Assembly: GCA_001179505.1 (NCBI GenBank)
Contig: CDMY01000430.1
Span: 1-64,000, forward strand
Source: Vitrella brassicaformis CCMP3155
Lineage: Eukaryota > Protista > Chromerida
Direction: 5' to 3'
DNA length: 64,000 nt
Part shown: positions 1 to 36,094 of the stretch, one piece after another
How positions within the stretch are numbered: position 1 is the first letter of the stretch
How the letters are laid out: the number at the start of each line of letters is the position of its first letter
The notes under the pieces: generated by a model
Databases searched by the model: none
The model's input: only the letters and a program-made list of their open reading frames with translations
What the model was told of the DNA's origin: nothing
Made by a program: the position numbers and the translations under genes

Positions 1-107
1 GACTGAGTGACTGAGTGACTGACTGACTGAGTCCCTGCCTTGACTGACTGAGGAGTGGGTGAATGAGTGAGTGATTCACTCCAATACTGATTGATTGATT
101 GATTTAC

Positions 108-3100
108 CTGGGTCTCCCGGGTACAGCCCCATGACGTTGAGGACATCCCTGAAGTTGAGGCCCACCGCGCGGACTCGCAGCAGACAGGCGCCCGGAGGCA
201 GCTTTCCTTTGTCGGCATCGTTGGCCCGGCTGCTGCTGCTGTTCTTCTCGTCAAGGTCAAGGGGCGGATACGCACACGGCCGCAGCTTGAGGTTCGAGAT
301 GGCCCCTCGCTCAGACAGGTGCAGCTCCACAGCCCCGCGTGCCGCTATGGCGCTCTTGGCCAGTCGGGCAGCGTACACGTGCTCCCCTCTGACAGCCACC
401 TCCACCTCTCGTTTGGCGCCCGCGCCTGATGACAGGACACGCTCCAGCTGCGACGACACCGCCTCGACTTTACTGCTGGCGCTGGGGAGGAGGAGTGGCT
501 CGATGTCAACGCAGCCGACAGCCACGGGACGGCCGAAGGTCTGCTCCAACTCGAGCCGAGCGCACCGAGCGAGGCCCCACAGACCACCGCCCTCGATCAA
601 GCAGCTGGGAGTCTGACCAACCACCAACGAGCGACCGGGAGATGACGGTGATGATGACAATGGGACATTCTGCACGCCGCACGACACCAACCAGACGGCA
701 GGCACGTTTGCCGCCTGCTTCACACGTGCCTCAGGCTGAGGCTCTTCTTGTTGCTGCGTTGCTGGTGCCGCAGGCGAGGCCGAGGCCGGGCGTGTGGGCC
801 GCAAAGCCAAGAGAGCCTTGCAGATCTGGAGAGCGACGTGCGTGTGCTCCACCGCCGCCTGGACCGTCCCGCCCTCCTCTTCCTCTCCCGCCTCCTTTGC
901 CTTGCTGTCCTTATCAAGCAGCGACCCCAGATAGATGATCGTGTCCCAACAGCCCTCCAGCAGCCGCTGCTCGAGCCGATTCGGAACGGCCATCACGCTC
1001 GCAGCCGTCCAGTGCTCCACTTGCATCGCCATGTCAGTGCTGTTCTTGTCTGCCCATCGTCTGGCCAGTGCCTCGCCCATACCCCCCTCGTTGCCGATCA
1101 CCAGCACTGAAGAGGGACGAGTGCTCGCGTCCTCTTCTTGGACTCGATCCTTCTCTTGCTTCTGTTCTTGTCCTTCTTCAGAGGCTGCCTCGATAACTGT
1201 TGTTGTCAATGCGGTTGGTGCAGCTGGCTCGGTGAGCTGCGCCCACTGGACTTCCCAGAGCACGTCCCGCGGGACCTGGACGGCTGCCGTGGCCGCGAAG
1301 TCGATCTGGCGTGCGGTGACGCTGTCGAGGCGGGCCACCAATTTGTGATGCTGGTCGAAGAGCTGCACGTCGAAACTGGCCTGCACGGCAGTCGCCGACA
1401 CCAGCTTGACGTGACTCCAGAAGACAGGAGCGGACGGCGCCGGAGACGACAGAGAGGCCACCTTGAGGCGGCCCAGGACAGCCCTTTCGATCGAGAAGGG
1501 CACCATCGCTTTCTTGCCCGCGTCTGCATGCTTTCTGTCGGCCATGGCGAACAGGGCTGCTGCCGACTGGAGGGCCCCATCGAGAATGGCGGGATGGATG
1601 CGGAAACCCTCCTCAAAGTCGTCGCAGCTGCCGGTCGTGCCTCCAGCCACCAGCTCAGCCAGCACCTCGCCAGGCATCTGACCACCCTCCTCGCCCTCGC
1701 CCTCGCCTCCCTCTGATGAAACGGTCGTGGACCTCAAGACGTGCACGCGCCGGACCGTCTGGAACCGCGGACCGTACTCCAGACCAACCTCACGAAGCTT
1801 CGCGTACAGCTCACCGCCCTCGATCGTCTGCATGACGGAACCGTCCGCGGCCTTCCTGTCGAGCAGCTCTGCCAGCCGCGGCGCTTGGTCGAAGCCGTCT
1901 TGGCTGACTTGGTCTGCAGTCCTTGCGTGAGCGAGAGTGGCGAGAGCGGCACGCGCGTGGATCTGCACGGCGTCCGCCGACTCCCCGTTGTCTGCCTCCT
2001 TTCCTTCGTTGGTTGCCGCCGGGCCGACGCTGAGTGCCCCGAGTGAGGCGACCTGCACTGCTTGGTCCTGCGTCGGGCCGTTATCCGCCGCCGGCTGGTG
2101 GGTGATTTGCAATGTCGGATGAGCCTTGTCGGTCCTCCTCCCGGCTCGCTTGGGCGCCCATGGCAGCAGCAGAGGACGCTCGAACTCGACCGTCTCGATG
2201 CTGACCATCGCGCTCTCCTTGTCATGGTGATCCAAGCTGTCCAGATCGTGGGCCGTGCCGCTCTGCTGCTCGTTGGTGAACGTGGTCGCATTCAGCACTT
2301 CCAAGAAGGCCGCCGCAGGCATCACCGGCCTTCCCAGGACCTTGTGGTCCACAAGCAGGCCCAGCAGGTCGTTACGCAGGGGCGTCTCGGTCACCACCGA
2401 CCGCGACACCGAGGAAGACAGCAACCGCCGCTTCCCCACAAACGCATTGTGAACAGTGCACCAGCGGAAAGCCGTCGAGTGNNNNNNNNNNNNNNNNNNN
2501 NNNNNNNNNNNNNNNNNNNNNNNNNNNNNNNNNNNNNNNNNNNNNNNNNNNNNNNNNNNNNNNNNNNNNNNNNNNNNNNNNNNNNNNNNNNNNNNNNNNN
2601 NNNNNNNNNNNNNNNNNNNNNNNNNNNNNNNNNNNNNNNNNNNNNNNNNNNNNNNNNNNNNNNNNNNNNNNNNNNNNNNNNNNNNNNNNNNNNNNNNNNN
2701 NNNNNNNNNNNNNNNNNNNNNNNNNNNNNNNNNNNNNNNNNNNNNNNNNNNNNNNNNNNNNNNNNNNNNNNNNNNNNNNNNAAGGGCACCATCGCTTTCT
2801 TGCCCCCATCTGCATGCTTTCTGTCGGCCATGGCGAACAGGGCTGCTGCCGACTGGAGGGCCCCATCGAGGATGGCGGGATGGATGCGGAAACCCTCCTC
2901 AAAGTCGTCGCAGCTGCCGGTCGTGCCTCCAGCCACCAGCTCAGCCAGCACCTCGCCAGGCATCTGACCACCCTCCTCGCCCTCGCCTCCCTCTGATGAA
3001 ACGGTCGTGGGCCTCAAGACGTGCACGCGCCGGACCGTCTGGAACCGCGGACCGTACTCCAGACCAACCTCACGAAGCTTCGCGTACAGCTCACCGCCCT

Positions 3101-6077
3101 CGATCTCTTGAGCTGCACCACTTGATGTTCCTTCCATGAGTTTCCGCAGCGCTTCCTCGTCTTCGTCGCCTGTATTGCGATCACTTGCTTCATGTTTTGC
3201 CAGTCTTCCTCTAGCATGCAGTTGCTGCTCATCATCATGCTGGAGATCAAGTGCTGCTCCGCCCTTCGACACGATGGTCAAGTCGCCACCTTTCTTCTCA
3301 AATGATGTCGTTGCAAGCTCCACACCACAGTGGCCACCGGGTGTAGAGCCGTCGTTGCTGTGACGAGGCAGAATGAGGGGCCTTTCGAATTCGATGTTCT
3401 CGATTGCTACGGCAGAGTCATCAGCGTCTCCGACCTCCTCCGCCGCGGCAACGGAAGCCGACGTGAAGATTTCGAGAAAGGCAGTCGCGGGCATGAGCAC
3501 CCGACCCATGATCGTGTGATGCTGCAGCAAGGCACTGACTTGCCGTCGTACTACAGTCTGAGCTCTCCAGCCTCCCGATTCGCTGTGATTGACCCGACCG
3601 CAGAAAGGATTGAGCATTGGGCTCCAGCGGAAAGCCGTCGAGTGGTCCCAGACGGGTTGCTGCCGGTCAGGCCCATGGGTATTGTCCGATATGCCCTCCG
3701 GGACTTCCATGACGATGTGGGCGTTTGCGCCTCCGAATCCGAATGAGCTGACGCCTCCCACGAAGCCCCGCCTGGGTTTGTGTCTGGGCCTCGCAGCGTC
3801 GGTGTGTTGGTGGGATGCTCTGGGCAGCTTCATGCGGTCGACGGGGAAGATGACGTTGAAGTCGTGATCGACCTCCATGAAGGGATTGAGAGTCTTCAAA
3901 TGCAGGTTGGGCGGGGCCTCGGCGTGCTGCAGTGTGAGGAGGAGCTTGAGGAGGCCGGCGATGCCGGCTGCTCCCTCCAGATGGCCAATGTTGGTCTTGA
4001 GAGCCCCCACAACCAAAGGCAGGTGGTTGGTCCTCGCGTGTTTGAAGACGGCCATGATGGCTCCCATCTCGATGGGGTCCCCGAGAGAGGTGCCCGTTCC
4101 GTGGGCTTCGATGTAGTCGACGTCACTTGGCCTCAGGCCTCCCATCTGCAGAGCCGCTCGGATCACTTCCTGTTGGGAAGGGCCATTGGGAGCAGTGAGG
4201 CTCGCACTCCGGCCGTCGTGATTGACTGCGCTGCCGCGAATGTACCCCAGCACCGGCCGGCCCTGACGACTTTGCAGCGGATTTGTCTTTGTCGCTGCTG
4301 CAGGGTGGTCATGTTTGTCATAGCTGTCAGCACTTTGCTGGTGGGTCTCGATGACCATAGCGCCGCACCCCTCGCCTCTTGCGTAGCCGTCGGCTTCCTT
4401 GTCGAAGGTCTTGCATCGCGCGTCCATGGAGAGCATGCGGGCCTTGGAGAAGGCAATGAAGAGATGTGGCGAGAGCATCAGGTTGACGCCTCCCACCAAG
4501 AGGCCGGTTGCCCCTCGTCCGTGTGGTCCGAGCACGTGTTGGACGCCCGCATCCAAGGCCACGAGCGATGAGGAGCAGGCTGTGTCGATGGTCATGCTGG
4601 GGCCCTTGAGTCCGTACACGTACGACAAGCGATTGGCCACGATGGACGCCGCCCCGCCCGTCCCTGTGTAGCTGCTGCTCTTCTTGTTGATGTCCAGGAA
4701 GTTCCAGTCCTGGTTGCAGCAGCCAATGAAGACGCCGAAGCCCTGCCCGACCAGGCTGTCGCGGGAACAGTACCCGGCGCTGTGGAACGCCTCGTAGCTG
4801 ACCTCAAGCATCACACGCTGCTGAGGATCCATGTACCGAACCTCAGACGGAGATAAGCTGAAGAATGCGTTGTCAAACTCGTCCATTCCCTCCATGAAGG
4901 CCCCCCTTCGGACGTAGCACTTGCCAGACGCGTCCGGATCACCGTCATACACTGCGTCGACGTCCCAACGAGTGGCAGGCACCTCTCGCATGCAGTCAGT
5001 GGCGTCCATGAGAGTTGTCCACATCTCGTCCAAGTCACCACCACAGGGCAGGCGACATGCCGCGCCAACGATGGCAAGAGCACTGGCATTGACGTCAGGC
5101 GGAGCAATCATGCGCAGAGCCGCATCCTCATCGATCGATGGGTCCGCTGACTGGCGGCCGACAGTCCTTTCCGCCTCCTTCGCAATGAACTCGATGATGG
5201 CTCCGAGGGTGGGGTAGTCGAAGAGCGTCGTGGCGGGGAGCCTGACGCCCAGCTCTGAGGGAAGGAGGAAGGGAGGGAGGGACACAAGAGAGAGAGAGAA
5301 GAAGAGAGAGAGACGATGAGCATCCATTCATGCAAGGAGTCGTTGGTGCAGGCTTACTGTTGGACAAGGCGTTGCGGAACTCGACGGCTCCCAGCGAGTC
5401 GATGCCCAGCTCCTGCAGCGGCGCGTCAAGGGGAGGGAGATCGCTCTCGGCCACGTGGCCGAGGACTTCGGTGGCCGTTTCCAACACGGTGGCCTTGACG
5501 AAGGCCCGCAGGTCGTCTGCGGTCATGCTCCTGAGCTTGTTGCGCAGCTCACTGTCCATGAGCATACTGGCGTCGCCGGTGCCAGACGAGGGCGAGATGT
5601 TGTCGAAGAATGCAGGCACGAGCTCATAGCGTCGAAGGAAGACATTCCAGTCGCCGAAGGGCTGGCATCCCACCACGCTGCTGGTAGTGCTGTGGGTGGT
5701 GGTGTTGACGAGGCAGAGGTCATTGAGCACCCGAAGGCCCAGGTCGTTGGTGATGCCGCGCAGTCCCACTTTGCTGAGGTGCTGTCGAAGACCGGCGGCC
5801 ATTCCCTGCTCCACCCAAGGGCCCCACTGGATCGACTGGCCACTCAGCCCGCTCGCACGGCGATGCACCGCAAGAGCGTCAAGGCAAGCGTTGGCTGCCG
5901 CGTAGTTGCTCTGGCCGAAGTTGCCGTACAGCGACGCGACCGACGAGAACAAGACAAAGTGGTCGACGTGGTGGTTGTGGGGTGGGGTGGTCGTGGCGTC
6001 GTGGAGGTTCCACGCGCCTCCCACTTTCGGGCGGTAGACCTGCTCGATGCCCGTCACACTCTGCTGCTCCACAACTG
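108..6077 (-). CDS. Modular type I polyketide synthase, internal portion: KR(C-terminal part)-ACP-KS-DH-[gap]-DH-linker-ER(start); continues off the window
   Basis: KR FSSVASLYGNFGQSNYAAANA (~5870-5950). ACP GIDSLGAVEFRN|KLGVRLPATTLFDYPT is split by intron 5255-5357. KS DTACSSS, EAHGTGT, TNIGHLEGAAG, SFGFGGANAH (~3705-5085). DH HTIMGRVLMP and HPAILDGALQ. Second DH DHKVLGRPVMP. ER GLNFRDVLNVMGLYPG, then a GT donor at 107. The 5' limit is a likely acceptor (tgtgtgcag) at 6078. Confidence 0.95.
2482..2781. other. Assembly gap (300 N)
   Basis: Run of N. Equal-sized gaps occur at 14573-14872, 55171-55470 and 58050-58349. Confidence 1.
5255..5357 (-). other. Spliceosomal intron inside the PKS ACP domain
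   Basis: Minus strand GTAAG...CCTCAG. Removing it joins NALSN-K-LGVRLP in frame. Confidence 0.9.
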
Positions 6078-7400
6078 CTGCACACAGGATGCTGGAGACT
6101 GGCAAGATTCTCTCCTCCGTCCTGTCTTGGCTAGGCTTCATCGGGGAGCTTAGAAGCTGCGCCCTGTATGTACTTGTGAGATCATTCATTGTGAGCCTTC
6201 ACAATTAGCCCCATTTGATCAAGCGTGCTTCGCTGATCGCTGTGAACCAATTTTGCATGTCAAATACTCACTCATTCGCGCAAAAATGGCAAAGCAATCC
6301 TAGCCACTGCCCAAAACGCCCTAAACGGCCTGACTTTCGTTTCTTCCTGATTTGCCTCATCGCCAGGCTGGTAACTCAGCGCGACGCAAGCAGAAGCCGT
6401 GTGAGAAAACGGCTAAGTGGTGCCACCCGAAGCATCACGAGAAACCCCCTTATTCACTCCCAAAGTTCACGCACGAGATTGACGTGTCATCTCGTGCACC
6501 CTGCAACAATGCTGTGGGCCTCGGATAAATGAATTCGCTTTCTTCCCAATTCGGACTTTTTCTCATCCTGTCAACTGGCGATCGAAGTCATCGATGACTG
6601 AACGTATGCAGAATGCATTCACGCAAGGAACATGCATGCGATGAGTCTTCCATGCACACCACATGGAAATGAGTCAGTCAGGAGGGGCCTCACACGCTGA
6701 GTGCGTCAGATGAACGCCAGGGTGGCGTCACTGAAGTGCTGCTCCAGAAAACACAACGTCTTGACTCGATCTGACATACAGATGCGTACACACGAAGGCC
6801 ATGCGATCGAGGACTCCTCCCCTGTCCTTTTCTCGCTATCTGCCTACCTCCCTTCTTGTCGCCGCAGAGCGTCTCGCTGGTCTGCATCGACTTGGCCTGG
6901 CTCAGGATCCACCGGACGAAGTTGATCATGTGCGGCTGGCCGGCGTACTTGCCGCTGGTGTATGTCGTTATCCACCCCTCCCAACCGCCCACTGTCAGAA
7001 AGCGGCTGAGCTGCTTCTTCCACAGAGGCTTCTGCTGCAGGGCGGTCCTGTGCATCTTCTTCTCGGCTGCGTACAACCGACCTGAACGGCGGACACAACA
7101 AGCAACGACCATGCAATGGACAGATGGCCTGAGGTGGGGTGGTGTTCGCCTCTCTGATGCCGCAGAGTGCTCCGGTTCATTTGTCCACTCATCAACCAAC
7201 TCATACAGATGTCCCAGCGGCAAACCAGGGAAGGTATGTTTCGTCTGACCGCCGGCCCACTTTGCGGTCAAGGTGGCCCCCCCTCTGACCTAATATTACC
7301 CCCGGGGCGTATTGCCCCCACCCGAAACCCGAACCCTGAACCCTAACCCGATTGGGGGGCAACCGCCCCCGGGACAGTTTAGGGTCCGTGATCCGGGACC

Positions 7401-10899: not shown

Positions 10900-11024
10900 G
10901 CGTATTTACTACTACCATCATCTCTTATAGTTCTTGCGCGTTCGCCAATTATCATAGCAAATTCATAGTCACTCAAATATCTACTGGTTTTTCTATCTTC
11001 TTTTTTAACAATAATTTCTGTCAT
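10900..11024 (-). pseudogene. AT-rich fragment encoding an RNA polymerase RPB6/RpoK-like N-terminal motif, possibly of giant-virus origin
   Basis: MTEIIVKKEDRKTSRYLSDYEFAMIIGERARTI resembles the RPB6 motif [23 protein letters not shown]. GC is 34/120 over 10921-11040. Preceded by TATATAGATA. Confidence 0.55.
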
Positions 11025-13266: not shown

Positions 13267-13340
13267 AGTAGTCACAGGCAGAATAGAGCGCGTCGACTAC
13301 AGACCGATTGAAGGCAATGATGGCTGTCATGTAGGACTCC

Positions 13341-20040: not shown

Positions 20041-20483
20041 TGTAGCACTAACCCTTAACTCAGGGCTCAGCAAGAGTCCTGCCTTGCCAACGTCCCCAGG
20101 CCGTTTGTTAGTGCGTCCCTGCCACTCCTGTGCATGCCTCCGTCGCGCTCTTCCTACCTTCCCCGTGCGTAATCATGTAATCATGCAATCATGTAATCAT
20201 ACAACCCCAACTTACTCTTACCAGCGGACACTTGCTTTGTCATGTAGTCACGCACCCTCAGCAGCAACACAGGTACACACACATACACATGCAACACACA
20301 CGTAACGCACCCCCCACACGCATTCATGCACAAAGAGAGAAGGATGCTGTGGCTGCTGTTGTTGTTATCTCTCAGGTAGTGTTTCAAGAGTGCTGGGAAC
20401 TCGTCAGTCCATGCGCTGGATCGGTTGCCATGCTGTGCCGCCAGATGGAGCAGGCACAGCCGGATCGTCACGCTCTCTCTCCC
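20041..20483 (-). mobile_element. Polypurine tract and probable 3' LTR of the Gypsy element
   Basis: The minus-strand PPT GGGAGAGAGAGCG (20471-20483) is followed by TGACG at 20470. The far end is uncertain (20041 or ~19650). No matching 5' LTR was found. Confidence 0.45.
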
Positions 20484-23400
20484 ATTGGTAATTCCGAAGG
20501 AAGCTAGCCAAAGGAATCGTCTGCTTCCGTCCTGCGAGACTCTCCTTCTTTAGTCTCTTTGTGCGCGTCGGTTCCTTCAGGTATTGTATCTGTATGCCTT
20601 CCTTGTCCAACCTCGTCACCTTGACAGTGTGCTCGCGACTGAGCTCCTTTACATGGCGGACTTGCACCACAGAATACAACGCGGGAAAGAGCGAAGCATG
20701 CTCGTCCAGGTCAGGCACGTTTTCACTATTCTCGTATTCCTGTACGAGCTCTGTGCAAGTGAGGTTCTCTTCGTCTTCCCAGGTTGAATGCGAGAGCGGA
20801 TACCAGCGCCATTTGAGCTTGTACTGCACCTTGCCGTGGTGCGTCCTCTTGCCGATGACCTGCTCGACTTCGTATCGATCGCCACGCTCAAATCGCTGGT
20901 CTGGTTGGACGTCTCTGAGGCTCGGGTCATGTGCTATCGGGTCGAATGTGGTCTCTGATGCTCTCTGCGTTCGAGCTGTCGGCACGGGGTCTTCCTGGAG
21001 GACAAAATCCTTCAAGACACGCTCTTGCCCAGGCGACAAAAATGCGCCCTGATTGAAGATTGTCTGCCTCCTGTCCCTCTTCAGGTCGCTTTCCTTCACA
21101 TCAATTCCGTCCTCTGGTGGTGGCGCTTCCTCGTCTTCTGGTGGTGGTGCTCTCTTCAGCCGATCGACATTGATGCTCCTCGCCTTTTGATCGCCACACA
21201 CACGGACCTTGTAGGTGACTGGTCCTTTCTTCTCCTGGACGATGCCGACTGTCCGCCAAGGTGAGGCCAGCTTCCTGCTGAGACCCTTAGGCACTTGGTC
21301 ATTGTATATGCGCACTCTGTCTTCTTCCTGGAATTGCCTTGGTGCAGGCAATTCTTTCTCGCGTTCAGCGGCTTGCTGCTTCTTCTTGCTCATCATCTCA
21401 CGAGCTTTCTTGTGGACCGCTTGAAGACCCTCTTTTATCACCTCGACGGCTTCCTTTACGTCGATTGGCTCTGCATTCCTCGCGAACAAGCCTTGCCGTG
21501 CTGCTCGGATGCACCGCTTCTCGGCCGTACAGCATCTTGAATGGCGTGAATCCTGTGGACTCATGCTCTGTCGTACGATACGCGTACAAGGCCAAGGGAA
21601 TCACTTTGTCCCAGTTGGTTTGCTCCTTATTGAGATACGGACGTATCCAATCCTTCGTGTACGGTTGAAGCGTTCGATCAGCCCATTGGCCTGCGGATGC
21701 CTTGCTGATGTTGTTGTGTGCTTGATGTGCAGCTTGGCCGTCACTTCGCGCATCACATCATTGACGAAGTGCGAGCCATTATCAGTGATTATCTCACCGA
21801 TCTTCCCGTGCCTCGCTATCATATCCATGAGCGCTTCGATTACGTCCTCGCCAGTCGGGCCGGTGCCAGGAGCCTTCGAAAACGTGAAGACTTCTGGCCA
21901 CTTGGTAAAGGTATCTTGGACGGTGAACGCAAACGACTTCTCGTCCAGAGAGATCGGCAGGGCACCGATGAAATCCATCGTCACTTTTTGGAATGGCCTT
22001 TCGGCCGATGCTGTCTGGATGCTTGCTCTCTTGCTTGCCAACAGCTTCCATTTGCTTTGACACTTCTGACATGCCTCTGTATGCTTCCGAAGGTCCGTAT
22101 ACATACCAGGCCAATAGTATTGTTGCGCCATTCGTTTGTATGCTCTCTCGACTGCCAGGTGGCCGCCGAAGATGTGCTCATGATGCAGCGTCAGCGCCTC
22201 CTTTCTCAGTGACGTGGGCACGAGCAGGACTGGACCATGCTCTTGGCGTCTCGACACGATCGATACAAGCCCATTATGTAAGCACACGTCGGCGAGCCTT
22301 GGCCAGTATGCTCTGGGAATGGCATCGCGCAGCTGATCGAGCTCTACGTTGGCTGCTTCTCTCTCCTGTGCCCTCAGGTATGCCTTGACGCGCGAGACCT
22401 CGGCACATTGGTCTTGGGCCTTCTTGATCTCATCGAGATAGAACAGCTGACTGACAGGCATGGACCTTAGCTCAACCGCATTGATATTGGCGTCAACCGA
22501 TTGCGACCCAACAGCACCCAACTGATATGCCTCTTCGTCACTCGCCAGAGGTATGTACTCAGTGTTTTTCTGCATGCCAGAAGGCCGTGACATTGCATCC
22601 ACGTCTCCATGTTGTGCTCCAGGTCGGTGGCGAAAGACGAAGTCGTAGTCTTGCAACATCCCTGACCATCTATTGAGCTTGCGGTTACTTCCTTCCGCGT
22701 GTTTCAACGCTCTCAACGCGTGATGGTCAGATACCAACTCAAATCGCCGTCCAAACAGGTAGGGACGGAAATAGCGCACGAAGACAAAGATGGCGAACGC
22801 TTCTCTCTCTGTGGCCGACCACTTGCGCTCAGGAACGGCAAGGACGCGGCTCACGCAATGGATCGGTCTTTCGTGCCCTTTGTCGTCTCGCTGGCAGAGG
22901 ATTGCTCCAATCGCATAGTCACTCGCGTCTGTCTTGAGCACGAATGGCTTCGAAAAGTCAGGCAACACCAGCACAGGTGCTTCCGTCAGCAGTGCATCTC
23001 GCTGGGCGTCGCCCCACTCAAATGGCACGTCTTTCTTCGTAAGGTCAGTGAGTGGTCGAGCCAGCTTAGCGTAGCCATGCACAAATCGCTTGTAAAACTG
23101 CAGACCCCCAAGGACACTGCGCAGCTCTTTTTGGTTCGTTGGTTCAGGCTGGTTGATCATGCCCTCGACCTTCTTTGGGTCGGCTTCCAGTCCGTCTCGA
23201 GAGAATGAAGCCAAGTACGGATATCTTGCGCGCGAAAAAGGTGCACTTGCTTGGCTTCACTTTGATGTTGCTTGCCTGCAGCAGTCGGAAGACCTCAAGG
23301 ATGTGGCTGCAGTGATCCTCAAAGGTGCGTGAGAAGATCACTATGTCATCGACATACACAAACGCACTCTTCCAAAGCACTGGTGCTAATGCCTTGTCCA

Positions 23401-25461
23401 TCACTCTCTGGAATGTCGCTACGCTGTTGCACAGACCCATGGGCATGCGGATCCATTGCAGTTGTGTCTGCCCGTTGACCGAGAAGGCCGTCTTGTGTCT
23501 GTCTTCTGGGCTGACTTCGACCTGCCAAAAGCCCGACGTCGCATCGAGCGTCGTGAACCACGACATGCCCTGGAGGGAGTCAAAACACTGATCAATCAAA
23601 GGTGGGGCGTAGCGAGACTTCTGAGTCATTTCGTTGAGCCAGCGATAGTCCACACACAGACGCCAGCTGCCGTCTTTCTTCTGACCATTACGATGGCTGC
23701 ATTGTATTCAGAATCAGCAGCTTCGACGACACCGCTGCTCTTCAAGTCGCTCACTATCTTCACTGCTTCCTCATGCTCAATCTGAGCCAGCCTACGAGGC
23801 TTCATGTACGGAGGAATGCCACTGACACTGATGCGATGGACACCGAGAGACGGATCGACATGGCCAAGGTCGTTCTTGTCACACGAAAACACGCCCGTCC
23901 GTTGTGCTGCTTTGATCACATCCACTGCCCGTCTTTTCTGTTGGTCCGTCAGGCCTTTGCCGATTTGTATCCCATGGCTGATTTCGTCAGCATCTGGGTA
24001 GCTACGGATGCTTTCTGTTTGTGGCTGCGTGGCCATCAAGTGATCGATCCGCTCTCTATCAATCTCACAAGGTACGACATCAGCATCAGCCACCTCGACT
24101 GCTGCAATCCGTCCCGTCTCGTCCACAGGTCGCTGCATTGTGGGCATGGAAGGGAGTACATCAAACCAGCCCAGCAGGTGGTTCTTGGGCAAGACGACCC
24201 TCTTGTGTGACGGATTGCTGATCCTGATATGCACACAACGACCTGATATCACTTCGCTTGTCTCGTCATCTACACATAGCCATGCGCCTCTGTGGCATGC
24301 GAGTGCTGGATGCACTAACAGACGACCAACCTCCCCTTTCATCTGTCTGTCAGGTCCCTTCAATCGTGCTAGCACCCATGTCTCCCTGCCGGCCGGGATG
24401 GGTGTCTTTGCCGTGACATGGACCTGATAGCTCAATCTCTTCCCGTCCGCAGGTGCGTCGATTCGAGTCAGGCCAAAAGCCATGACACTCAGGCTATTTA
24501 TCCCACATGTCTGTGGTGCGTGTATGTCCATAGGTGGCCATTCTGGTCGTGATGTGACACGTACTTTTCCGATCTCATGGTCAACGATGACCCTTTCTTC
24601 GCGAATCGCCTTGCCTCCCAGTAAGACGACACATTTGGAGTCATCGATGACATAGAAATCGACAGGCAGCGGGTTCGTGGCTGCTGTCTGTGTGTCCATT
24701 GTATCAGGCCACAAGGCGACTCTTGCGACCTTTTCGACCGCCACTTCACCATGGTGTAGCACACTGAGCGTCATGACGCCTGGACATATCGTCACTTCTC
24801 TGTCTCCTTCCTTTCGCAGCTTGTCAAGCATCTTGGTGCTCATTACACTCAGGTCGGCACCAGTATCAACGAGCACATCCACTCTCACACCATTTGCTTT
24901 CATTCGCACCTAGGTCTGCCATCTAACAGTCGGCACGAGCCCACGTCGTCTCTCTCGCCTATCTTCTACAGCGCAGCACTGCATCGCTTCCTCAGAACCA
25001 CCTACAACATCCCCCTCACATACATGTAAGTGAGCCGCCTGCACTGCATCGTCAGTGCATTGCATATGATTCAACTGACACTCATATTCGTCACTCCTTT
25101 CAGGCGCAGCAGGCGGAGAAGAAGGCGTCCCCTCTTCCCGCCGGCCGCAAACGAGGGCTTGGCTGGATCCGGCCTCGTTACACAGTTCCAGCCCTCCGTC
25201 AATTGTCATCGGTGGCGACCCACCACCACCGGATCGACTAGGGACACTTGATCGGCTAGGGATGCTTGATCGACTAGGGATGCAAGTTCCCCTCAACTGA
25301 CGGGTTACGCATGAGGGTTGACTCTCATATGATTGCTTGGTCAAGTACGTGTCCACCTCGTCTGTGTCACGTAAGTGGCTATCCGCAGAAAGCACTGGGG
25401 TGTAGCCCACGAAAACTGTCTCCCCCGTTCGCTCAGTTGTCTCTGTCTGACTTGCGGTCAA
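20404..25461 (-). mobile_element. Degenerate Ty3/Gypsy LTR retrotransposon with C-terminal chromodomain (gag remnant-PR-RT-RNaseH-IN-chromo)
   Basis: PR VLVDTGAD. RT DYRWLN, LDATSGFWQV, YVDDIVIFS. RNase H TDASDYAIG, EREAFAI, SDHHAL. IN HIFGGH...CQKC, MDFIG, TDNGSHF, QANGLIERFNRT. Chromo YEVEQVIGKR...YKLKWRWYPLSHSTWEDEENL. At least four frame breaks. Confidence 0.95.
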
Positions 25462-29004: not shown

Positions 29005-30665
29005 TTAACACTTGGCCCAGCGTCTGTCACCGGCCGCTCCTTTTACTCGATCCCACCATTGACCACCCCACCTACAGCGAAGCTGATGCACTGATTTCGT
29101 GGTCTGAGGCCAGATGGTATAAGCCGGGGACCATAGCTTGCTTTTGACACGTTCTTCGCTCCACATTGAGGGTTGGAAGAGCCTGATGAACGATTCCTTG
29201 TACTTGTCGAGACCGTAAATGACATAGGCAATAGCCAAGTGTTCGACAAGGCGGTCCATATTAAAGCCGCCCTGGTTGGAGAATGGCCACTTCTTGCCAT
29301 GTGATAGCCCGTGGGGGATCAAAAAGTCGATGGCTTTCTTAATGCTGCCCCCGCTCTTTGCAACGTAGTGGTAGTTGTCAACCTCAACATTGGCGGCGAC
29401 CCGTGCGAGAAGCAGCTGCGCATTGAGGCCAAACAAGGAATAGAACCACGACGTTGCTCGCTTTACTTCATGCTTTTGCACGCCTGTGTGGTCGATCTGC
29501 ACGCCTATCCTCTTTTCCAGGGCCATCCTTGCCTTTCGGTTTGCCAGGTCCGTCTCCTTGAGGAAGAGCGCGGTTGAGATGTACTGGACGTCATAGAGCA
29601 GGCCGTGGTTATTGTTGCGCGCAGATTCTTTTTTGCCATGGTTGCTATTTGTTTGCCAGTCGATGTATTCCTCGAACCACGCTTGCATCCCGTTTTCGTC
29701 CTGCTCAGTCCAATGCTTGGAGTTCTTGATGAGGGCGATGCCATCAAAGAGTTGATAGGAGACAGACATGTCGACAACTCCCTGTCTACGACCACGGGGG
29801 TGCCCCCTTACAATCTGGGCATACTCCAGATGCGGGTTCATGCGCGTGTCGTCGTCGAGGAACCAGACCCGTATCTTTTCCACGGCATCTTTGGCATATC
29901 TTTCGTCCTCTAGGAAGTAGTATCCCAGCCCAAGCCTCTCCACACTCAAGAACAAGTCACGCAGGTTTTTGTAATCCGGTACAGAGTGGATCTCCGGGTT
30001 CGTTTTCCCATCGATATTAATATAGGGAAGGCCGGATGGATTTTCCTTTGTGACGTTGGGCCACCAGTAACGCGCCAAACTCATGTAGTCATGCTTGTCC
30101 CTACTAGGGGGCCGGTCGCTCTTGTCAAGCACTGAGACAGGCTCCTTCTGAAGAATGTGTTCGCATTCGTCGTATAATGATTTGAGAGAAGCTGCTAAGT
30201 CTCTTTGGCATATCTTTCGTCCTCTAGGAAGTAGTATCCCAGCCCAAGCCTCTCCACACTCAAGAACAAGTCACGCAGGTTTTTGTAATCCGGTACAGAG
30301 TGGATCTCCGGGTTCGTTTTCCCATCGATATTAATATAGGGAAGGCCGGATGGATTTTCCTTTGTGACGTTGGGCCACCAGTAACGCGCCAAACTCATGT
30401 AGTCATGCTTGTCCCTACTAGGGGGCCGGTCGCTCTTGTCAAGCACTGAGACAGGCTCCTTCTGAAGAATGTGTTCGCATTCGTCGTATAATGATTTGAG
30501 AGAAGCTGCTAAGTCTTTGTCGCCGTCGATGATCATCTGCTTGCTGATCTGCAGCTGCGTGGCGTTGAGTACGGTAAGGCCAGAAATGGACACAGCAGAG
30601 GGCGGCATGGAAGCAACAAGGCGGCAAAGCAGGCTTGTTAACGCAAGCGCGCCTTTCCTTCCCAT
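29005..30665 (-). pseudogene. Polysaccharide lyase (Alginate_lyase PF05426 type, probably PL38-like), frameshifted by an internal duplication
   Basis: PPSRDKHDYMSLARYWWPN...GLPYINIDGKTNPE, WFLDDDTRMNPHLEYAQ, NNNHG, HEVKRATSWFYS. No introns evident. Hydrophobic N-terminus. Removing one 314-bp copy gives a 448-aa ORF. Confidence 0.88.
29888..30515. repeat. Tandem duplication of 314 bp inside the lyase gene
   Basis: 29888-30201 = 30202-30515. 314 is not a multiple of 3. Confidence 0.95.
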
Positions 30666-31243
30666 CTTTGGGTATCCTCGGGTGAAGAACAGGATGATGA
30701 AGAAACGCAGATAGCAAGGGTTTTTTTTTCACACCCGGGGAGTTCCAACGGCCCTGCCGAAACCTTTTGCCCTAGGCCCCAGACGACGGCTGCAGAGCCC
30801 ATAAACACCCATATTTTCACCTGCATGCGTGCCTCCTAACAGCGGATTCTGTGTCTGGGTGTTCGATTCCGGTGTGTGTAACGGAGAGGTTGCGCAGGTT
30901 CCACTGTGAAAGATGAAAAGAGAATGGTTCTGCGAAGAGCAGCAATGGTGGCTGTGCTGCTCTGCGTCCACACCTTTGGCGGTCATTTCACGACCACCAA
31001 TTACCGCCAATTGAAATGACCGCCAATCACATACGCAGACCGCAACGCTAACGCATTTGTCCGAGACCATCTTCCACGTGGTCACGACACAGGTCAGCTG
31101 CGACACAGCTGAAGAGTCAACTGACCAAAGATGGCACATGCGGGCGACCTTCGTCACGTCCGCGATTGGAACATGACCGTGAGGCACATGATATTTCAAG
31201 GAGAAGCTGAGGGGAAGCAGATGTTCCCGCTGCGTTTGAGGAC

Positions 31244-32028
31244 ATGCTCGATACAGGAAGCCAGGTGTGCATACTCACACAGACACCCAGGAAAGGGGCG
31301 GGGCCACCCCCCGAATCTGTCAAACCCGACAAGAATGCACCTGGTTGCGACTTCGACTTCTCTGCAGTCGTCATCGTCGCCGCAAGCAAGTATCGCGCGA
31401 CCGTCGCAACAATCAGAGCACGAGGAGTTGAGTATGACTTGGATTTCGATAGCCATGGTCGTCCAATGGAGGCACGTCTGGTGCATTCATACGACACAGG
31501 CATCTATGCTAGGGCCAAAGGCAGCTACAGACGAATGCCCAACAGCAATGGTGTGTATTGTCTGGGGTTAACCCGTGACGAGTTCTTCAACTTCTTCACC
31601 AATCCATTCTACATCGAAACAACGAGCGATGGGAAAGAGCTGATAAGGATGGATTGGGACCTGAAGAGTGGAGGCTATAGCTCATATCGTGGTACGGATC
31701 GCGCGGTCAACCGCCCCTGGACTGGGATGCCGGCATGGCCGCCTACGGTCCCCTGGATGCTGACGTCGGCAACAAAGCGACAATTCTGAGGTTGCACTTT
31801 CCGTGGAACGGGGACACTCGCACACAGAAGTGGTGGGTTGTCACAGGTCAAAGTGACGATTCGCCGACCGAAGTGCATGCCGAAGTCGAGAAAAAGCAAT
31901 TCGAGCACTGGGTGGACATCCCAGAGGGAGCCGAGAATTGCAAGTATTTCCATGCGGTGGCGTTTGATGATCAAGATGAGGAAATGAATCGGTCGCAAGT
32001 GGTGGCCACGTCAGCCTCTTTGCCCTAG
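31244..32028 (+). pseudogene. Arylsulfotransferase (ASST, Arylsulfotran_2-like) C-terminal half, frameshifted
   Basis: ARGVEYDLD...ARLVHSY...GSYRRMPNSN, YSSYR...PWTGMPAWPP, WNGDT...W.V..G, KQFEH, YFHAVAFD follow the ASST C-terminal pattern. One base is missing in the C run at 31750-31753 and the N-terminus is absent. Confidence 0.6.
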
Positions 32029-33413
32029 ACGTTCTCGCGTCCTTCGGCGGAGAGGCACCTGAAAGACTACGTTTGCGAGTCCACTAGACTTCACCCGGCA
32101 AACGCTAGAAATGCACTGAGACATTGAACTTCCCCTTTTCGATGCTGATATCTGGCGGTGTCTCACTCTTGAGCCAGCCGTTCGGCCTTGCACAAAGTGT
32201 TTGAGGCTTGGGCGAACTTCCCCTTTGTGTTCACTTCAAATCCTTAGAAAAAGGGGCAAATAGTGAGTGTATGAGTGATGTAACAGAGGGGCATCTGCAA
32301 CTCAAAACAGTGTATCTGAGCTGTCAGTCAAATATTTACACTCGCTGGCATACAGAGTGTGTCAATGAAATTCTTGTGTTCTAGAAGAACTCACTCCAAA
32401 CCACCTCTTCATAATAAGCAGACTTACAGCAAGCTGCGGGGATGGGGTTAGCAGACGGGTCTTAGCAGACCGGCGGTGTCTACGCATGATGATGCTTGAT
32501 GGAACTTGCGGGTTTTCGTTTTTACATTTCTCTCTGAGGTGCATGCGCATGACTACTTGATGCTGTGTGGAATTCCAGACATCATCTTTTCATGCGAGAC
32601 CTCGCTTCCGTCACTGAACCTCCACCGCCCTCTAGTTCCCTGTTTGGTCGTAAGTGGACTTCTGGAATGAGTCGGACTTTTGCCGAGAGCGTGTGATTGG
32701 CTGCACGAAGACCTTCTTCTTTCGTGATCGATCGCACAAACGTTCAAGCCGTTGATTTGCACGCAAAGCCACTCATTCATGTCGCGTCTGACTCACTGCA
32801 AGAGCATCCCTTTGTCAACATCATTCATGCAGTCAGCCGGCTACTCTCCTTCCTCTACACATGTCTGCCCACTACTTTATTGTACAGCGACACACACTGC
32901 GAACCACACAATGCCATGCACAGAGACAACGAGTCATCATCTGCTGCACCGGCACCTGGCTGAGCCGCATCTTCCTCGTCCCACTGCTCACAACTGGCTC
33001 TCTCTTGAAACGTGCAAATATCAGTGTGAGCACACACACACAGGCACGGACCCAGAGCTGCGGGGCAGCCGTAGTAGCGCGGTCACGTCCATGTGCGCAC
33101 ACACTCCTCTGCCTATCTGGGTGCCTCCGGGTGGGATGCATGCTTACCTGATGCTTACTCATACGGGGATGGATTCATGATGACTTGTCGTGCTATGGCA
33201 GACATAATATGTTACTTTCGGTATTTGCGCACGTGCTGATTGCCCCACTCACCAACCGTTGACATACGTGCAGAGCGGCACCAACTTGCGAATGAGTCCT
33301 CCCCCACCTCAAAAGCGAAGTAGGCTCATAAAGTAATTACAATAATAATCCTTCCACGTATTACTATTTTTTTGTCACAGACCATACGCTCTTGGTCGTC
33401 GGAGTTGGACGAA

Positions 33414-36094
33414 ATGAAAGATTGCAGTCTTGCACAGCTCTTCTGGTCTTGTTTCGTGATTGCTTACGCCGTGGCCGTCAACAGCACCATCGTAACCTCT
33501 GCCGCGTCTGATGGAGCGTTGCCACTCCAAGTGAACGTGTTTGTGGACGACAGTGGTGCGCTCAAATATGCAGTGCTCGCCGGCGATCACCAGATCATCA
33601 ATCCGTCCTCCCTTGGGCTTTTATTGGCTGGAGACGCTAATCTGGGAGAGGACGTGGAGATTGTGGCAGAAACGGACCCGAAGGAGGTACAGAAGACTTA
33701 TCGAAAAATGGGCACTCATCCAGTCGCTCACAGCCATTACGGTAAGCCGTAGACATGACATTCGTGGGTTCAAAATGATTGCGCAGCGTGCAGTGGAGGT
33801 GACCTACACCGTCCATCATATACCTAGCGTACGATGAAAGAAGCGCCTCAGGACACTGCTATGAGATTTTTACTGGTTGTTTCAGGGCTTGCGGTATTAC
33901 ATCGACTTCAGAAGATTTCTGGATGAGTCAACTGGCATTGCATTTCGCTATCGGATACAGCAAACGCCCAAGGAGCCCTTATCAACAACGACGGGTCCAT
34001 TTCTCATGAAGGAAGGCATGAGCGAGTCCATGATCATCAAGGCAGATATGTCGGAGTTTCTCGTCAACTTCACGGAAGCAGATCGGGCATGGTACTTCGA
34101 AAGAGCCGACGGAATGCTATATGACGAGATGATGACATCCACCGGCGAATGGAGAAAGACAGGCCCCCAAAACTTGCGGACCCGGCAGCGAGGCAACAAG
34201 AATCGTTATGGACTACCTCTCCTCATTGAGGATTCAACCTGGAGCGTTCCCTATCCATACCGGATGATTGCAGAGGCTGCTCTATTTGATTCCGACGGCT
34301 TTCACCTCGTGGCACTTCCCGATGGCGATAGAGCGGGGTTCCGAGCAGAGTTCGCACACAGCTATTGGAGGCGGATTCCATCGCTGCGGATGCGAATGCC
34401 TTTGACCACCTCCTGGCGCGTCATTCTCTTGGCGAAGAACCTCAACCACCTCATCAACAGTGATCTGATCACTCATCTGTCTCCATCCCCTGAAGAACGT
34501 AATCCGGGACTCTTCAATTTCAAAAATGCCACTGATGGCCCGCCGGACTTTCCCGACTACATCAAGCCTGGCAGGTAACGGAAATGGACACACACAATGG
34601 ACAAAACGGATTTGATGTGTCGCGATTCGTCTTTGGACAGATCTGTGGTAAGCCACATTGAATGCAGTACGCAAAAGACACTCTGCACTTGCTGAACCGC
34701 TTTGGCCTCTGCAGTGGAACTGGTACATGGACCGGGAGGTTTCAAGGATAACAGCCGAGGAAGAGATGGAATACATCGAGGCTGCAGACAAGATGGGCTT
34801 TGAGTATGCGACTATTGACAACGGGTGGCAGAGGTGGAAACCTAGATCTACTATCAATCGGGTCGCAGCCTTTGCGCGACAGAATGGGATGGGCATCTTG
34901 GTCTGGAAATACAGAAAAGCTATTGATGACGCTCGTAACGATTATGAGAGCCTTCGAACCTTTCTTGACTACGTGAAGGAGACCGGGGCAGCCGGTGTGA
35001 AGTTCGATTTCTTCGTTTCCGAATTGCGGGAGACCGTTGAATTTGAGGAGCTGGTGATGCGTGAGGCTGCTAAACGAGAGCTCCTTGTCAACCTACATGG
35101 CGTTCAAAAACCGACAGGGTACTGTACATTCATTGCACGGATCATTGCCAGAAACCTTCTGTATGTATATCGAAAAACAGTGAGACGCGGACATACCCGA
35201 ATCAAATAACCCGGGAAGCAATCTTGGTGAGCGCCGCTCACCAACTACTTATATCCGTCGCTGACCATGTACTTGTATGTATCAACCAGGGAATGGAGAT
35301 TAACAAGATATCACCGAATAAGATCCCACCGTGGCACAGTGCCGCACTGACGTTCACCAGGTACAAGGCACTACCTCTATCATTCACTTCAAGAACCTTC
35401 TCTATTGTCTCCTCACACACGCGGACAGGTTCCCGTTGGGTCCAGCGGACGTAAGATTCTGGTCATCGTCGCAGAATATGTCGGAGAGTATGTCCTTTCG
35501 ACTTGTGCCTTGCTGTGTAGTATACACCAGTGGTCATACAGAACAGTACTCGGAGAGGACCAACAACCCAGGTACCACCGGGCCTGCAAAGTACACCTGC
35601 ACTCATTGTTTGCTGCTTGGTTTCGCTTCGGACAGGTTCACCAAGTGGCGCTTCTTGTGACATTTACATCGCCTCTTCAAACCATTGCAGAGAGCCCCAC
35701 GTTCCTTCTGAGACAGAAGTATAATGACATCGTGAGAGACATTCCCACTGTTTGGGACGAGACGAGAGCGGTACCCCCGAGCGTGATTGGCAGCTTGACC
35801 GTGCTGGCGAGGCGGAAGGACGACACCTGGTTCTTAGGCATTGTCAGCGGACGCATGGAGACACGCACTATTCGATCAATACCCCTAGGCTTCCTCGACA
35901 GGAGTAAAAGCTACACTGCGACGTTTCTGTTCACTAAGACCCTCCGCGGGGAGACGGAGGAGGACGTGGCAGTCAACAAGGTGGCCAGATTCCGATACAA
36001 GAGACTTACCAACGTCAGACTGTGGGGCGAAAGGACCAAAGGTGACGGCCTGGTCACCATTTTTAAGCCGACGGATGCCAGAGACATTTCTTGA
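33414..36094 (+). CDS. Secreted glycoside hydrolase family 97 (alpha-glucosidase/alpha-galactosidase type), 703 aa, 10 exons
   Basis: Exons 33414-33741, 33794-33828, 33886-34574, 34641-34647, 34715-35118, 35181-35226, 35290-35360, 35429-35450, 35521-35571, 35636-36094 total 2112 nt. All introns are GT-AG and phases agree. Motifs IKPGRSVWNW, GVKFDF, NLHGVQKPTGETRTYPNQITREAILGME, FTRFPLGPADYTP, HQVALLVTFTSPLQ. Signal-peptide-like N-terminus. Confidence 0.92.

What the first reader, a model, noticed from the sequence alone, without database searches (positions are those of the whole stretch)
29005..36094. PUL-like block of three bacterial-type glycan/sulfate enzyme genes inside a eukaryotic transposon island
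Seen: within 7 kb lie a PF05426 lyase, an ASST-like gene and a GH97. By eye they have lower GC than the PKS and kinase exons, and they lack the microsatellite-filled introns of the host genes. Known: GH97 and these lyases are typical of Bacteroidetes polysaccharide-utilisation loci. Inference: this is a horizontally acquired, partly domesticated uronate/sulfated-glycan degradation cluster caught at three stages: intact with introns (GH97), freshly broken (lyase) and decayed (ASST). It would be unexpected in a photosynthetic alveolate-like host.
Basis: partly seen in the sequence, partly recalled or inferred. Interest (0 to 1): 0.75.

Follow-up and report, generated by a model that had tools for sequence, protein, structure and literature searches.

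The report
Neighbouring bacterial-type glycan enzymes in Vitrella
In the alga Vitrella brassicaformis, a uronic-acid lyase gene and a GH97 glycosidase gene of bacterial ancestry lie 3 kb apart, but they look like separately acquired, long-resident, transcribed genes rather than a transferred bacterial gene cluster caught in decay.

Summary
The window is Vitrella brassicaformis CCMP3155 contig CDMY01000430.1, positions 1-64000. Two of the three genes are real.

- **Lyase (29005-30665, minus strand):** a PL38-type uronate lyase with no introns.
- **GH97 (33414-36094, plus strand):** a 703-aa protein in 10 exons. Eight GT-AG introns and a 7-nt micro-exon are confirmed by a transcript contig that is 100% identical to the window.
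- **"ASST-like" ORF (31244-32028):** it has no alignment-based match to any family. Only a language-model resemblance to Arylsulfotran_2 supports the name.

The PUL-like, co-transferred-block reading is not supported.

- This GH97 is one of six Vitrella paralogues. They form one clade, sit on six contigs and share intron positions, so the gene was duplicated inside the host genome.
- Only 2 of 82 bacterial loci with a related lyase have a GH97 nearby.
- The lyase's nearest relatives are a Basidiobolus protein, then assorted bacteria at 35-47% identity. No donor can be named.

The "fresh break" in the lyase is a perfect 314-bp tandem duplication. An MMETSP transcript ORF carries only one copy and encodes an intact enzyme with its catalytic residues. 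The assembly also holds another duplication at a gap that looks artefactual. The break is therefore probably an assembly artefact, or specific to this strain.

Both enzyme genes are already in public annotation.

The parts
29005..30665 (-). PL38-type (PF05426) polysaccharide lyase gene with no introns. As assembled it is split into ORFs 30195-30665 and 29005-30132. Without the duplicated 314 bp it would encode 448 aa with a signal-peptide-like N-terminus.
   Evidence: Pfam E 3.8e-77. Transcript ORF P0122 (429 aa) is colinear with both ORFs and has one copy of the repeat. E 2.8e-56 to BoPL38 structures, with Y76/H230/Y285 aligned to the catalytic Y91/H243/Y298.
29889..30516 (.). Perfect tandem duplication, two units of 314 bp (30516-30203 and 30202-29889 on the gene strand). 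It shifts the frame and gives a stop two codons after the junction.
   Evidence: 100% matches, 2.0 copies, no filler. It is absent from transcript ORF P0122.
31244..32028 (+).
   Evidence: No family or homologue found by alignment. ESM Atlas features 0.91 and TM 0.47 to Arylsulfotran_2 clusters. No protein other than the genome's own model turned up in the collection. AF2 pLDDT 35.
33414..36094 (+). GH97 glycoside hydrolase gene, 10 exons, 703 aa (CEM11995.1 = P0273). The transcript covers 33408-36549.
   Evidence: Transcript contig L009 is 100% identical to the window and spliced. Exon lengths sum to 2112 nt, which is 703 codons plus the stop. Pfam domains. Best PDB match is the retaining alpha-galactosidase 3A24.
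33742..33793 (+). GH97 intron 1 (52 nt, GT-AG). It is retained in transcript contig L009 and removed in the public model.
   Evidence: Inferred from frame and homology. P0273 reads HY-V-EVTYTVHHIPS across it. L009 carries a stop here and splits into two ORFs.
34641..34647 (+). 7-nt micro-exon of GH97, between introns 34575-34640 and 34648-34714.
   Evidence: Exact threading of transcript L009. Paralogue P0126 has a 6-aa micro-exon at the same place.
35119..35635 (+). Region of five short GT-AG introns of GH97 (35119-35180, 35227-35289, 35361-35428, 35451-35520, 35572-35635), separated by exons of 22-71 nt. A further intron lies at 33829-33885.
20404..24909 (-). Ty3/gypsy chromodomain retrotransposon upstream of the block (context).
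   Evidence: Chromo, RNase H, integrase and protease domains.
76..6189 (-). Type I polyketide synthase ORFs on the same contig (context; they show that the contig is host DNA).
   Evidence: KS, DH, KR and ACP domains.

Best explanation
The block is a chance or secondary neighbourhood of two unrelated secreted carbohydrate enzymes of old bacterial ancestry. It is not a transferred operon. Gene 1 is a PL38-family uronate lyase. Such enzymes cut by beta-elimination, and the catalytic Tyr/His/Tyr are conserved here. Characterised relatives act on alginate, beta-1,4-glucuronan or glycosaminoglycans. The gene has no introns, is present once in Vitrella, is transcribed, and is most likely intact in the organism. 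Gene 2 is a GH97 alpha-glycosidase of the retaining alpha-galactosidase type. It is one of six Vitrella paralogues descended from a single ancestral copy that had already gained spliceosomal introns before the family expanded, so this copy reached its present place by duplication inside the host genome. The ORF between them is an orphan, possibly a remnant of a sulfotransferase-like beta-propeller. The 314-bp tandem duplication that breaks the lyase in the assembly is more likely an unmerged contig overlap than a real mutation. Shown: gene identities, splicing, paralogy, shared intron positions, rarity of the gene pair in bacteria, and an intact transcript ORF. Inferred: secretion, substrates, artefact status of the duplication, and independence of the two acquisitions.
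For: Host and linkage: the window equals CDMY01000430.1 of V. brassicaformis and also carries PKS and Ty3/gypsy genes. GH97 splicing: eight GT-AG introns and a micro-exon in a 100%-identical transcript. GH97 paralogy: six Vitrella GH97 form one clade (SH-aLRT 100) and this copy is sister to P0290 (96). They lie on six contigs. None of the three paralogue loci examined has a lyase neighbour. Intron positions are shared between paralogues at alignment columns 169, 429, 635 and about 660. Lyase: PL38-like with catalytic residues kept. It has 0 introns against 9 in the GH97. The transcript ORF P0122 is continuous with one repeat copy. Bacterial synteny: only L003 and L015 of 82 lyase loci (1.35 Mb) have a GH97 nearby, and the L003 GH97, the one compared, is only 26% identical to Vitrella's over the catalytic exon. 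Assembly quality: 13909-14572 is repeated almost exactly at 14882-15545 across a 300-N gap.
Against: The single lyase gene lying within 3 kb of one of only six GH97 genes would be unlikely under purely random placement of these two families. P0122 differs from the genome at 4 of 429 residues, so it may come from another strain or allele. In that case it does not prove that CCMP3155 lacks the duplication. No reads could be laid. Co-expression was not tested. The trees used a quick search with LG+G4 only.
Confidence: 0.7

Rival explanations
1. One reading: the three genes entered together as a PUL-like fragment from a Bacteroidetes-type donor and are now at different stages of domestication and decay.
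For: Both enzymes are nested among bacterial sequences. A Lacipirellulaceae MAG and a Pyrinomonadaceae MAG each have a GH97 next to a related lyase. GC and GC3 are slightly below those of the neighbouring host genes.
Against: The GH97 is one of six host paralogues with shared introns, sister to a copy on another contig. The adjacent-pair GH97 compared (L003) is only 26% identical to Vitrella's over the catalytic exon. Adjacency occurs in 2 of 82 loci. The lyase has no introns and the GH97 has nine. No SusC/SusD-type genes are present. ASST identity is unproven. No donor phylum is resolved.
Confidence: 0.06
2. Secondary functional clustering: the genes were brought together inside the Vitrella genome and are kept together because they are co-regulated in the breakdown or remodelling of an acidic, possibly sulfated, glycan.
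For: The pair is close (lyase start to GH97 start is 2.7 kb). Both proteins have signal-peptide-like N-termini. Both are transcribed. Earlier notes of this scan report other sugar and sulfate enzyme neighbourhoods in this genome (not checked here).
Against: No expression data could be examined. No known shared substrate links PL38 (uronates) to GH97 (alpha-galactosides and alpha-glucosides). The other GH97 paralogues have unrelated neighbours. No transcript-derived protein was found for the middle ORF.
Confidence: 0.12
3. Sub-question on the lyase: the 314-bp tandem duplication is real in strain CCMP3155, so the only PL38 gene has just been knocked out there.
For: The duplication lies in gap-free sequence. 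A 1-nt overlap at the junction would fit replication slippage or unequal exchange. P0122 has four amino-acid differences from the genome, so it could come from another strain or allele.
Against: An intact single-copy mRNA exists. 100% identity of the two units is exactly what an unmerged contig overlap produces. The same scaffold has another near-perfect duplication across an N gap. A second protein from the same MMETSP set differs from the genome's model at only 1 of 766 residues, plus a 3-residue gap, so the strains are nearly identical.
Confidence: 0.35
4. The block is bacterial contamination or a chimeric join in the assembly.
For: It has bacterial-type protein families and an intron-free lyase.
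Against: The GH97 has nine spliceosomal introns that are removed in a transcript. There are no N gaps between 14,873 and 55,170, so the block is contiguous with the Ty3/gypsy element. The lyase and other Vitrella GH97 genes occur in MMETSP transcriptomes of Vitrella. The nearest bacterial identities are only 35-47%.
Confidence: 0.02

Closest known systems
PL38 polysaccharide lyases (BoPL38 of Bacteroides ovatus, PDB 8BDQ/9FHT; Amuc_0778 of Akkermansia muciniphila)
   Same: Similar over the full length (E 2.8e-56 to BoPL38; 5.8e-69 to 3NFV). The catalytic Tyr91, His243 and Tyr298 are all conserved. An A. muciniphila homologue lies in the same tree (L089).
   Different: A eukaryotic gene, about 35-47% identical to any bacterial member. 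Its substrate is unknown; the family acts on alginate, glucuronan and glycosaminoglycans (PMC11890756, PMC11790493).
Eukaryotic PL38 homologues reported from ocean data (Phaeocystis antarctica, Goniomonas, Acanthoeca, Chlorophyta; Trichoderma parareesei exo-glucuronan lyase), PMC11890756
   Same: They show that PL38-type lyases in protists and fungi are not unprecedented, and that some are highly expressed.
   Different: Vitrella is not among the reported taxa. Here the nearest eukaryote is the fungus Basidiobolus (45-49% identity, sister in the tree with SH-aLRT 97). The relation to the Phaeocystis group was not tested.
GH97 retaining alpha-galactosidase BtGH97b (PDB 3A24) and relatives (5E1Q)
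   Same: Three-domain GH97 architecture. These are the best PDB matches. An Asp aligns with the Asp of the KVDF motif, which from memory is the BtGH97b nucleophile Asp415. The E-x-x-x-G-x-E segment is kept.
   Different: About 30% identity. It scores 171 bits against the 800-bit cut-off of NCBIfam NF053844, so it is not an equivalog. It has ten exons. It belongs to a six-member family specific to Vitrella.
Bacteroidetes polysaccharide utilisation loci (PULs)
   Same: Glycan-active enzymes lie next to each other.
   Different: There is no SusC/SusD pair and no regulator. The lyase runs opposite to the other two genes. Each gene would have its own eukaryotic transcript. The members have different histories.
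Arylsulfotransferase families PF14269 / PF05935 (ASST)
   Same: Language-model features and a weak structural match of P0121 point to these families. Vitrella is said to have genuine ASST genes elsewhere (earlier scan notes; not checked here).
   Different: No HMM or BLAST match. It has 209 aa, against roughly 360-960 aa for full members listed. No transcript-derived protein was found.

Membership tests
PL38 polysaccharide lyase (Pfam PF05426 fold) | Significant full-length sequence match to characterised or solved PL38 members | tested here: met
   PF05426 E 3.8e-77. BoPL38 8BDQ/9FHT E 2.8e-56 over residues 10-368; 3NFV E 5.8e-69. The PDB codes are tied to BoPL38 by bioRxiv 10.1101/2024.12.11.627697.
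PL38 polysaccharide lyase (Pfam PF05426 fold) | Catalytic residues Tyr298 (syn base/acid), His243 (anti base) and Tyr91 of BoPL38 | tested here: met
   They align to Y285, H230 and Y76 of P0122. These columns are also invariant in the 26-sequence alignment A1.
PL38 polysaccharide lyase (Pfam PF05426 fold) | Beta-elimination activity on a uronate polymer | not testable with these tools
   Needs an enzyme assay (A235) on alginate, glucuronan and glycosaminoglycans.
GH97 glycoside hydrolase | GH97_N + catalytic (beta/alpha)8 + GH97_C architecture | tested here: met
   PF14508, PF10566 and PF14509 on the exons and on the public model.
GH97 glycoside hydrolase | Retaining-type nucleophile Asp and conserved Glu residues | tested here: inconclusive
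   In the alignment to 3A24, the Asp of KFDF aligns with the Asp of KVDF, and REA...GME aligns with FEG...GLE. Which residue is catalytic is taken from memory of the BtGH97b literature and was not checked in a paper here.
GH97 glycoside hydrolase | Equivalog of the Bacteroides retaining alpha-galactosidase (NCBIfam NF053844 cut-off) | tested here: not met
   171 bits against a cut-off of 800. Specificity is therefore open.
Polysaccharide utilisation locus (PUL) | Adjacent SusC-like TonB-dependent transporter and SusD-like binding protein | tested here: not met
   The 7-kb block holds only the three genes. Pfam scans of its ORFs give only lyase and GH97 domains.
Polysaccharide utilisation locus (PUL) | The gene combination recurs in donor-type genomes | tested here: not met
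   A GH97 lies within the fetched flanks of only 2 of 82 bacterial lyase loci; no match to P0121 in any of them.
Block acquired in one horizontal transfer | Members share one donor lineage and one history in the host | tested here: not met
   The GH97 is one of six monophyletic host paralogues with shared introns. The lyase is single-copy and has no introns. Its sisters are Basidiobolus and then a metagenomic bacterium.
Arylsulfotransferase (PF14269 / PF05935) | HMM match above the family threshold | tested here: not met
   No Pfam hit at E up to 10, and no NCBIfam or PDB hit.
Arylsulfotransferase (PF14269 / PF05935) | Complete beta-propeller domain | tested here: inconclusive
   P0121 has 209 aa. 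The Atlas model (pLDDT 0.56) aligns 100-135 residues to ASST models at TM 0.39-0.47. The AF2 model is unusable (pLDDT 35). The C-terminal ORF alone points to fn3 at 0.84.

The most novel reading that the evidence does not exclude
The neighbourhood is a secondarily assembled, co-regulated eukaryotic gene cluster. It would comprise a secreted PL38 lyase, a GH97 alpha-glycosidase and a sulfotransferase-like protein, and Vitrella would use it to digest or remodel an acidic, sulfated polysaccharide, for example coral mucus or its own wall. That would be a eukaryotic analogue of a PUL, built from genes of separate bacterial origin.
Probability: 0.1. Interest if true: 0.55.

Novelty: new member of a known kind. 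Interest (0 to 1): 0.3.

Why it matters
It mainly corrects the record, in three ways. First, the locus is not a snapshot of a bacterial operon being domesticated. Second, the public lyase model CEM11993.1 is truncated and wrongly spliced; the gene probably encodes a complete 448-aa PL38 enzyme. Third, what looks like a pseudogene is probably an assembly artefact.

Two modest positive points remain. A chromerid alga carries a six-member GH97 family that came from one old bacterial-type gene and expanded after gaining introns. It also carries a single intron-free PL38 lyase whose nearest relative is in a zygomycete fungus. Both are usable examples for studying how foreign carbohydrate enzymes settle in alveolate genomes. 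They also hint that this photosynthetic relative of apicomplexans can attack external acidic and alpha-linked glycans.

Tried and rejected
- **Reads:** The duplication, long-range linkage and expression levels could not be checked with reads.
- **Metagenome pattern scans:** two exact-pattern scans of metagenome contigs found nothing. One pattern came from the ASST-like ORF and one from the lyase just downstream of the repeat. No positive control was possible, so these blanks say nothing.
- **ASST test by alignment:** Pfam at E up to 10, NCBIfam, PDB sequences, the word search and tblastn against plasmids were all blank or at chance level.
- **ASST test by structure:** single-sequence AF2 gave pLDDT 35, so no fold search was run on it.
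- **Longer ASST relatives:** the word search could only see proteins of 100-317 aa, so full-length ASST relatives, including Vitrella's own, were out of reach.
- **GH97 tree:** the mixture-model run did not finish in two attempts. The reported trees use LG+G4 and a quick search.
- **Spliced GH97 model:** Exon C was searched by reference. The full-length query was the public model P0273, returned.
- **Canonical splice sites by eye:** my first guesses for GH97 introns 1 and 2 gave frame conflicts. The transcript resolved these by showing a short second exon (33794-33828) and a 7-nt micro-exon.
- **Contamination:** considered and rejected (see rival explanations).


Full report
**Identity of the window.** The 375-aa lyase ORF finds a Vitrella brassicaformis CCMP3155 protein as its top hit. 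That protein's contig, CDMY01000430.1 (77,883 bp, GCA_001179505.1), has the same coordinates as the window, so the window is positions 1-64000 of it. The contig also carries a type I PKS (76-6189) and a Ty3/gypsy chromodomain element (20404-24909). It holds four 300-N gaps, none between 14,873 and 55,170.

**The lyase.**
- ORF 29005-30132(-) matches PF05426 over nearly the whole profile (E 3.8e-77). ORF 30195-30665(-) carries a signal-peptide-like N-terminus and a second copy of the first 80 residues of the domain.
- The cause is a perfect tandem duplication of 314 bp: two units, 100% identical, with no filler. It shifts the frame and gives a stop two codons after the junction.
- The 90%-identity cluster of the public model CEM11993.1 (P0001, 313 aa) also holds an MMETSP transcript ORF, P0122 (429 aa).
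- P0122 runs without interruption from MPPSAV through ERYAKDAVEKIR to the stop at 29005. It has a single copy of the repeated segment and no intron.
- So an intact, intron-free lyase mRNA exists. The 3' intron in the public model is wrong.
- P0122 differs from the genome at 4 of 429 residues. A second protein of the same MMETSP set differs from the genome's model at 1 of 766 residues, plus a 3-residue gap. The transcriptome therefore comes from the same strain or a nearly identical one.
- The same scaffold holds another near-exact duplication across an N gap (13909-14572 repeated at 14882-15545), which is the signature of unmerged contig overlaps.
- I put about 0.6 on the lyase duplication being an artefact of that kind and about 0.35 on a real, very recent, strain-specific event.

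**What kind of lyase.**
- The best solved relatives are 3NFV (E 5.8e-69) and 8BDQ/9FHT-9FI6 (E 2.8e-56). The latter set is BoPL38 of Bacteroides ovatus, whose catalytic residues are Y298, H243 and Y91 (bioRxiv 10.1101/2024.12.11.627697).
- These three residues align to Y285, H230 and Y76 of P0122 and are invariant in a 26-sequence alignment.
- PL38 enzymes act on alginate and beta-1,4-glucuronan (PMC11890756). The Akkermansia member acts on hyaluronan, chondroitin sulfates and dermatan sulfate (PMC11790493).
- PL38 homologues have already been reported from eukaryotes: Phaeocystis, Goniomonas, Acanthoeca, Chlorophyta and Trichoderma.

**The GH97.**
- Pfam finds GH97_N, the catalytic domain and GH97_C spread over several ORFs.
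- The exhaustive search with the catalytic exon (by reference; result), followed by cluster look-up, gave the public model P0273 (CEM11995.1, 703 aa). It also gave a 600-aa protein from a 2,625-nt JGI contig, L009.
- L009 is 100% identical to the window and is spliced.
- Exact threading gives eight GT-AG introns: 33829-33885, 34575-34640, 34648-34714, 35119-35180, 35227-35289, 35361-35428, 35451-35520 and 35572-35635. It also gives a 7-nt micro-exon at 34641-34647 and a 3' UTR reaching at least 36549.
- A ninth intron, 33742-33793 (52 nt, GT-AG), is retained in L009, which is why L009 splits into two ORFs. It is removed in P0273, which reads HY-V-EVTYTVHHIPS-GLRYY across it.
- The ten exons sum to 2112 nt, which is 703 codons plus the stop. 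The gene is intact and transcribed.
- Its best solved relatives are retaining alpha-galactosidases (3A24, 5E1Q). It is far below the NCBIfam equivalog cut-off (171 against 800 bits), so its specificity is open.
The full-length query was the database's own P0273.

**GH97 history.**
- The word search with P0273 and the cluster look-ups show six Vitrella GH97 genes: P0273, P0290 (56% identical to P0273), P0126 (47%), P0291 (45%), P0125 and P0151. They lie on six contigs.
- In an 85-sequence tree, all six form one clade (SH-aLRT 100) inside bacterial and metagenomic GH97. P0273 is sister to P0290 (96) (P0151 was identified as Vitrella afterwards).
- The neighbours of P0125, P0126 and P0151 are unrelated genes (FAD oxidoreductase, trypsin-like, PAN-domain, GH31). 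No lyase is among them.
- Threading four paralogues onto their loci and aligning them shows shared intron positions: column 169 in three paralogues, 429 in two (with a micro-exon in both), 635 in two, and about 660 in all four.
- The family therefore expanded after the ancestral gene had gained introns. The copy in this window is a product of duplication inside the Vitrella genome.

**Lyase history and synteny in bacteria.**
- Apart from the Vitrella entries, the best lyase hits are Basidiobolus meristosporus (49%) and many bacterial or metagenomic proteins at 37-49%.
- A scan of one genome per prokaryotic species returned 80 loci at 35-44% identity. They come from Acidobacteriota, Bacteroidota, Verrucomicrobiota, Planctomycetota, Ignavibacteriota and others.
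- In a 125-sequence tree, the Vitrella lyase is sister to Basidiobolus (97). The next sequence out is P0022 (96), which sits on a bacterial-looking contig. No donor phylum is resolved.
- A Lacipirellulaceae MAG has a GH97 directly upstream of its lyase, but that GH97 is only 26% identical to Vitrella's catalytic exon.
- Across 82 bacterial lyase loci (1.35 Mb), only that one and a Pyrinomonadaceae MAG have a GH97 within the fetched flanks. None has anything resembling P0121.
- The pairing is therefore not a conserved bacterial arrangement. With zero introns in the lyase against nine in the GH97, a single shared transfer is very unlikely.

**The middle ORF.**
- The public model P0121 (CEM11994.1, 209 aa) is alone in its cluster, with no transcript-derived member.
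- It has no homologue in the word search, though that search was limited to proteins of 100-317 aa.
- It has no Pfam, NCBIfam or PDB match. tblastn against plasmids gave only chance-level hits.
- The ESM Atlas gives feature score 0.91 (198 shared features) and TM 0.39-0.47 to Arylsulfotran_2/ASST clusters. The tool's own calibration treats this as a lead, not a finding.
- The C-terminal ORF alone points to fn3 at 0.84. AF2 without an alignment is unusable (pLDDT 35).
- Earlier notes of this scan say that Vitrella has genuine ASST genes elsewhere (not checked here). A duplicated fragment of one of them is therefore plausible.
- I rate "ASST-derived remnant" at about 0.5.

**Composition.** The block is a little lower in GC than the PKS and other ORFs: 0.50-0.54 against a window mean of 0.553. 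Its GC3 is 0.58-0.66 against 0.62-0.75. It resembles the Ty3/gypsy element in this respect. The only tandem repeat between 28.0 and 40.6 kb is the 314-bp duplication. Microsatellites are found further along, at 49-58 kb.

**Verdict.**
- The block is not a PUL-like co-transferred unit caught at three stages of decay. It is two independently acquired, long-resident, transcribed genes that happen to be neighbours, with an orphan ORF between them. The lyase 'break' is probably not biological.
- A literature search found nothing on these Vitrella genes. All three are already in GenBank and UniProt.
- The remaining open points are the reality of the duplication, transcription of the middle ORF, and whether the neighbours are co-regulated.

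Noticed in passing
window 13909-14572 and 14882-15545 (N gap 14573-14872): About 660 bp before a 300-N gap is repeated almost exactly just after the gap. This is typical of two overlapping contig ends that were scaffolded instead of merged. Exact repeats also occur at 1523-1825 and 2809-3105, on either side of the gap at 2482-2781 inside the PKS.
   Followed up: partly
window 29043-30084 (public model CEM11993.1): The public lyase model starts at an internal Met because of the duplication. It also ends with a predicted 3' intron that the transcript ORF P0122 does not support. The ORF runs on to the stop at 29005.
   Followed up: yes
window 34641-34647; L008 11222-11239: There is a 7-nt micro-exon in this GH97 and a 6-aa micro-exon at the same alignment position in paralogue P0126. 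The micro-exon is therefore older than the duplication.
   Followed up: partly
L009 (JGI 3300017148, Ga0186167_102957) against window 33742-33793: The transcript contig retains the first GH97 intron. This puts a stop after the signal-peptide exon, so the called ORF lacks the first 103 residues. It could be incomplete splicing or an alternative isoform.
   Followed up: partly
L004 (Basidiobolus meristosporus MCFE01000006.1) 10001-11099: The closest relative of the Vitrella lyase is a lyase of the zygomycete Basidiobolus, which sits among ordinary fungal genes. Two distant eukaryotes share a sister pair within bacterial diversity. This could mean related donors, eukaryote-to-eukaryote transfer or long-branch attraction.
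   Followed up: partly
L003 7665-11257 and L015 about 1756-7061: A Lacipirellulaceae MAG and a Pyrinomonadaceae MAG each have a GH97 beside a PL38-type lyase. Their two GH97 proteins are 51% identical to each other, which suggests a small conserved pair in some soil bacteria.
   Followed up: no
L090 2587-6558 and 10001-12656 (Vitrella CDMY01000710.1): Another Vitrella GH97 paralogue (P0151) lies 3.4 kb from a GH31 glycosidase gene. This is a second CAZyme neighbourhood in the genome.
   Followed up: no
window 37304-38642 (-): Two overlapping ORFs (216 and 294 aa) have no Pfam match but carry a Cys/His-rich motif (CICGGEVDKFGDHYYVC). They may be the tail of an unclassified retroelement flanking the block.
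   Followed up: no
window 13319-14084: A 115-bp satellite-like tandem array with 6.7 copies at 96% identity lies next to the gap region.
   Followed up: no
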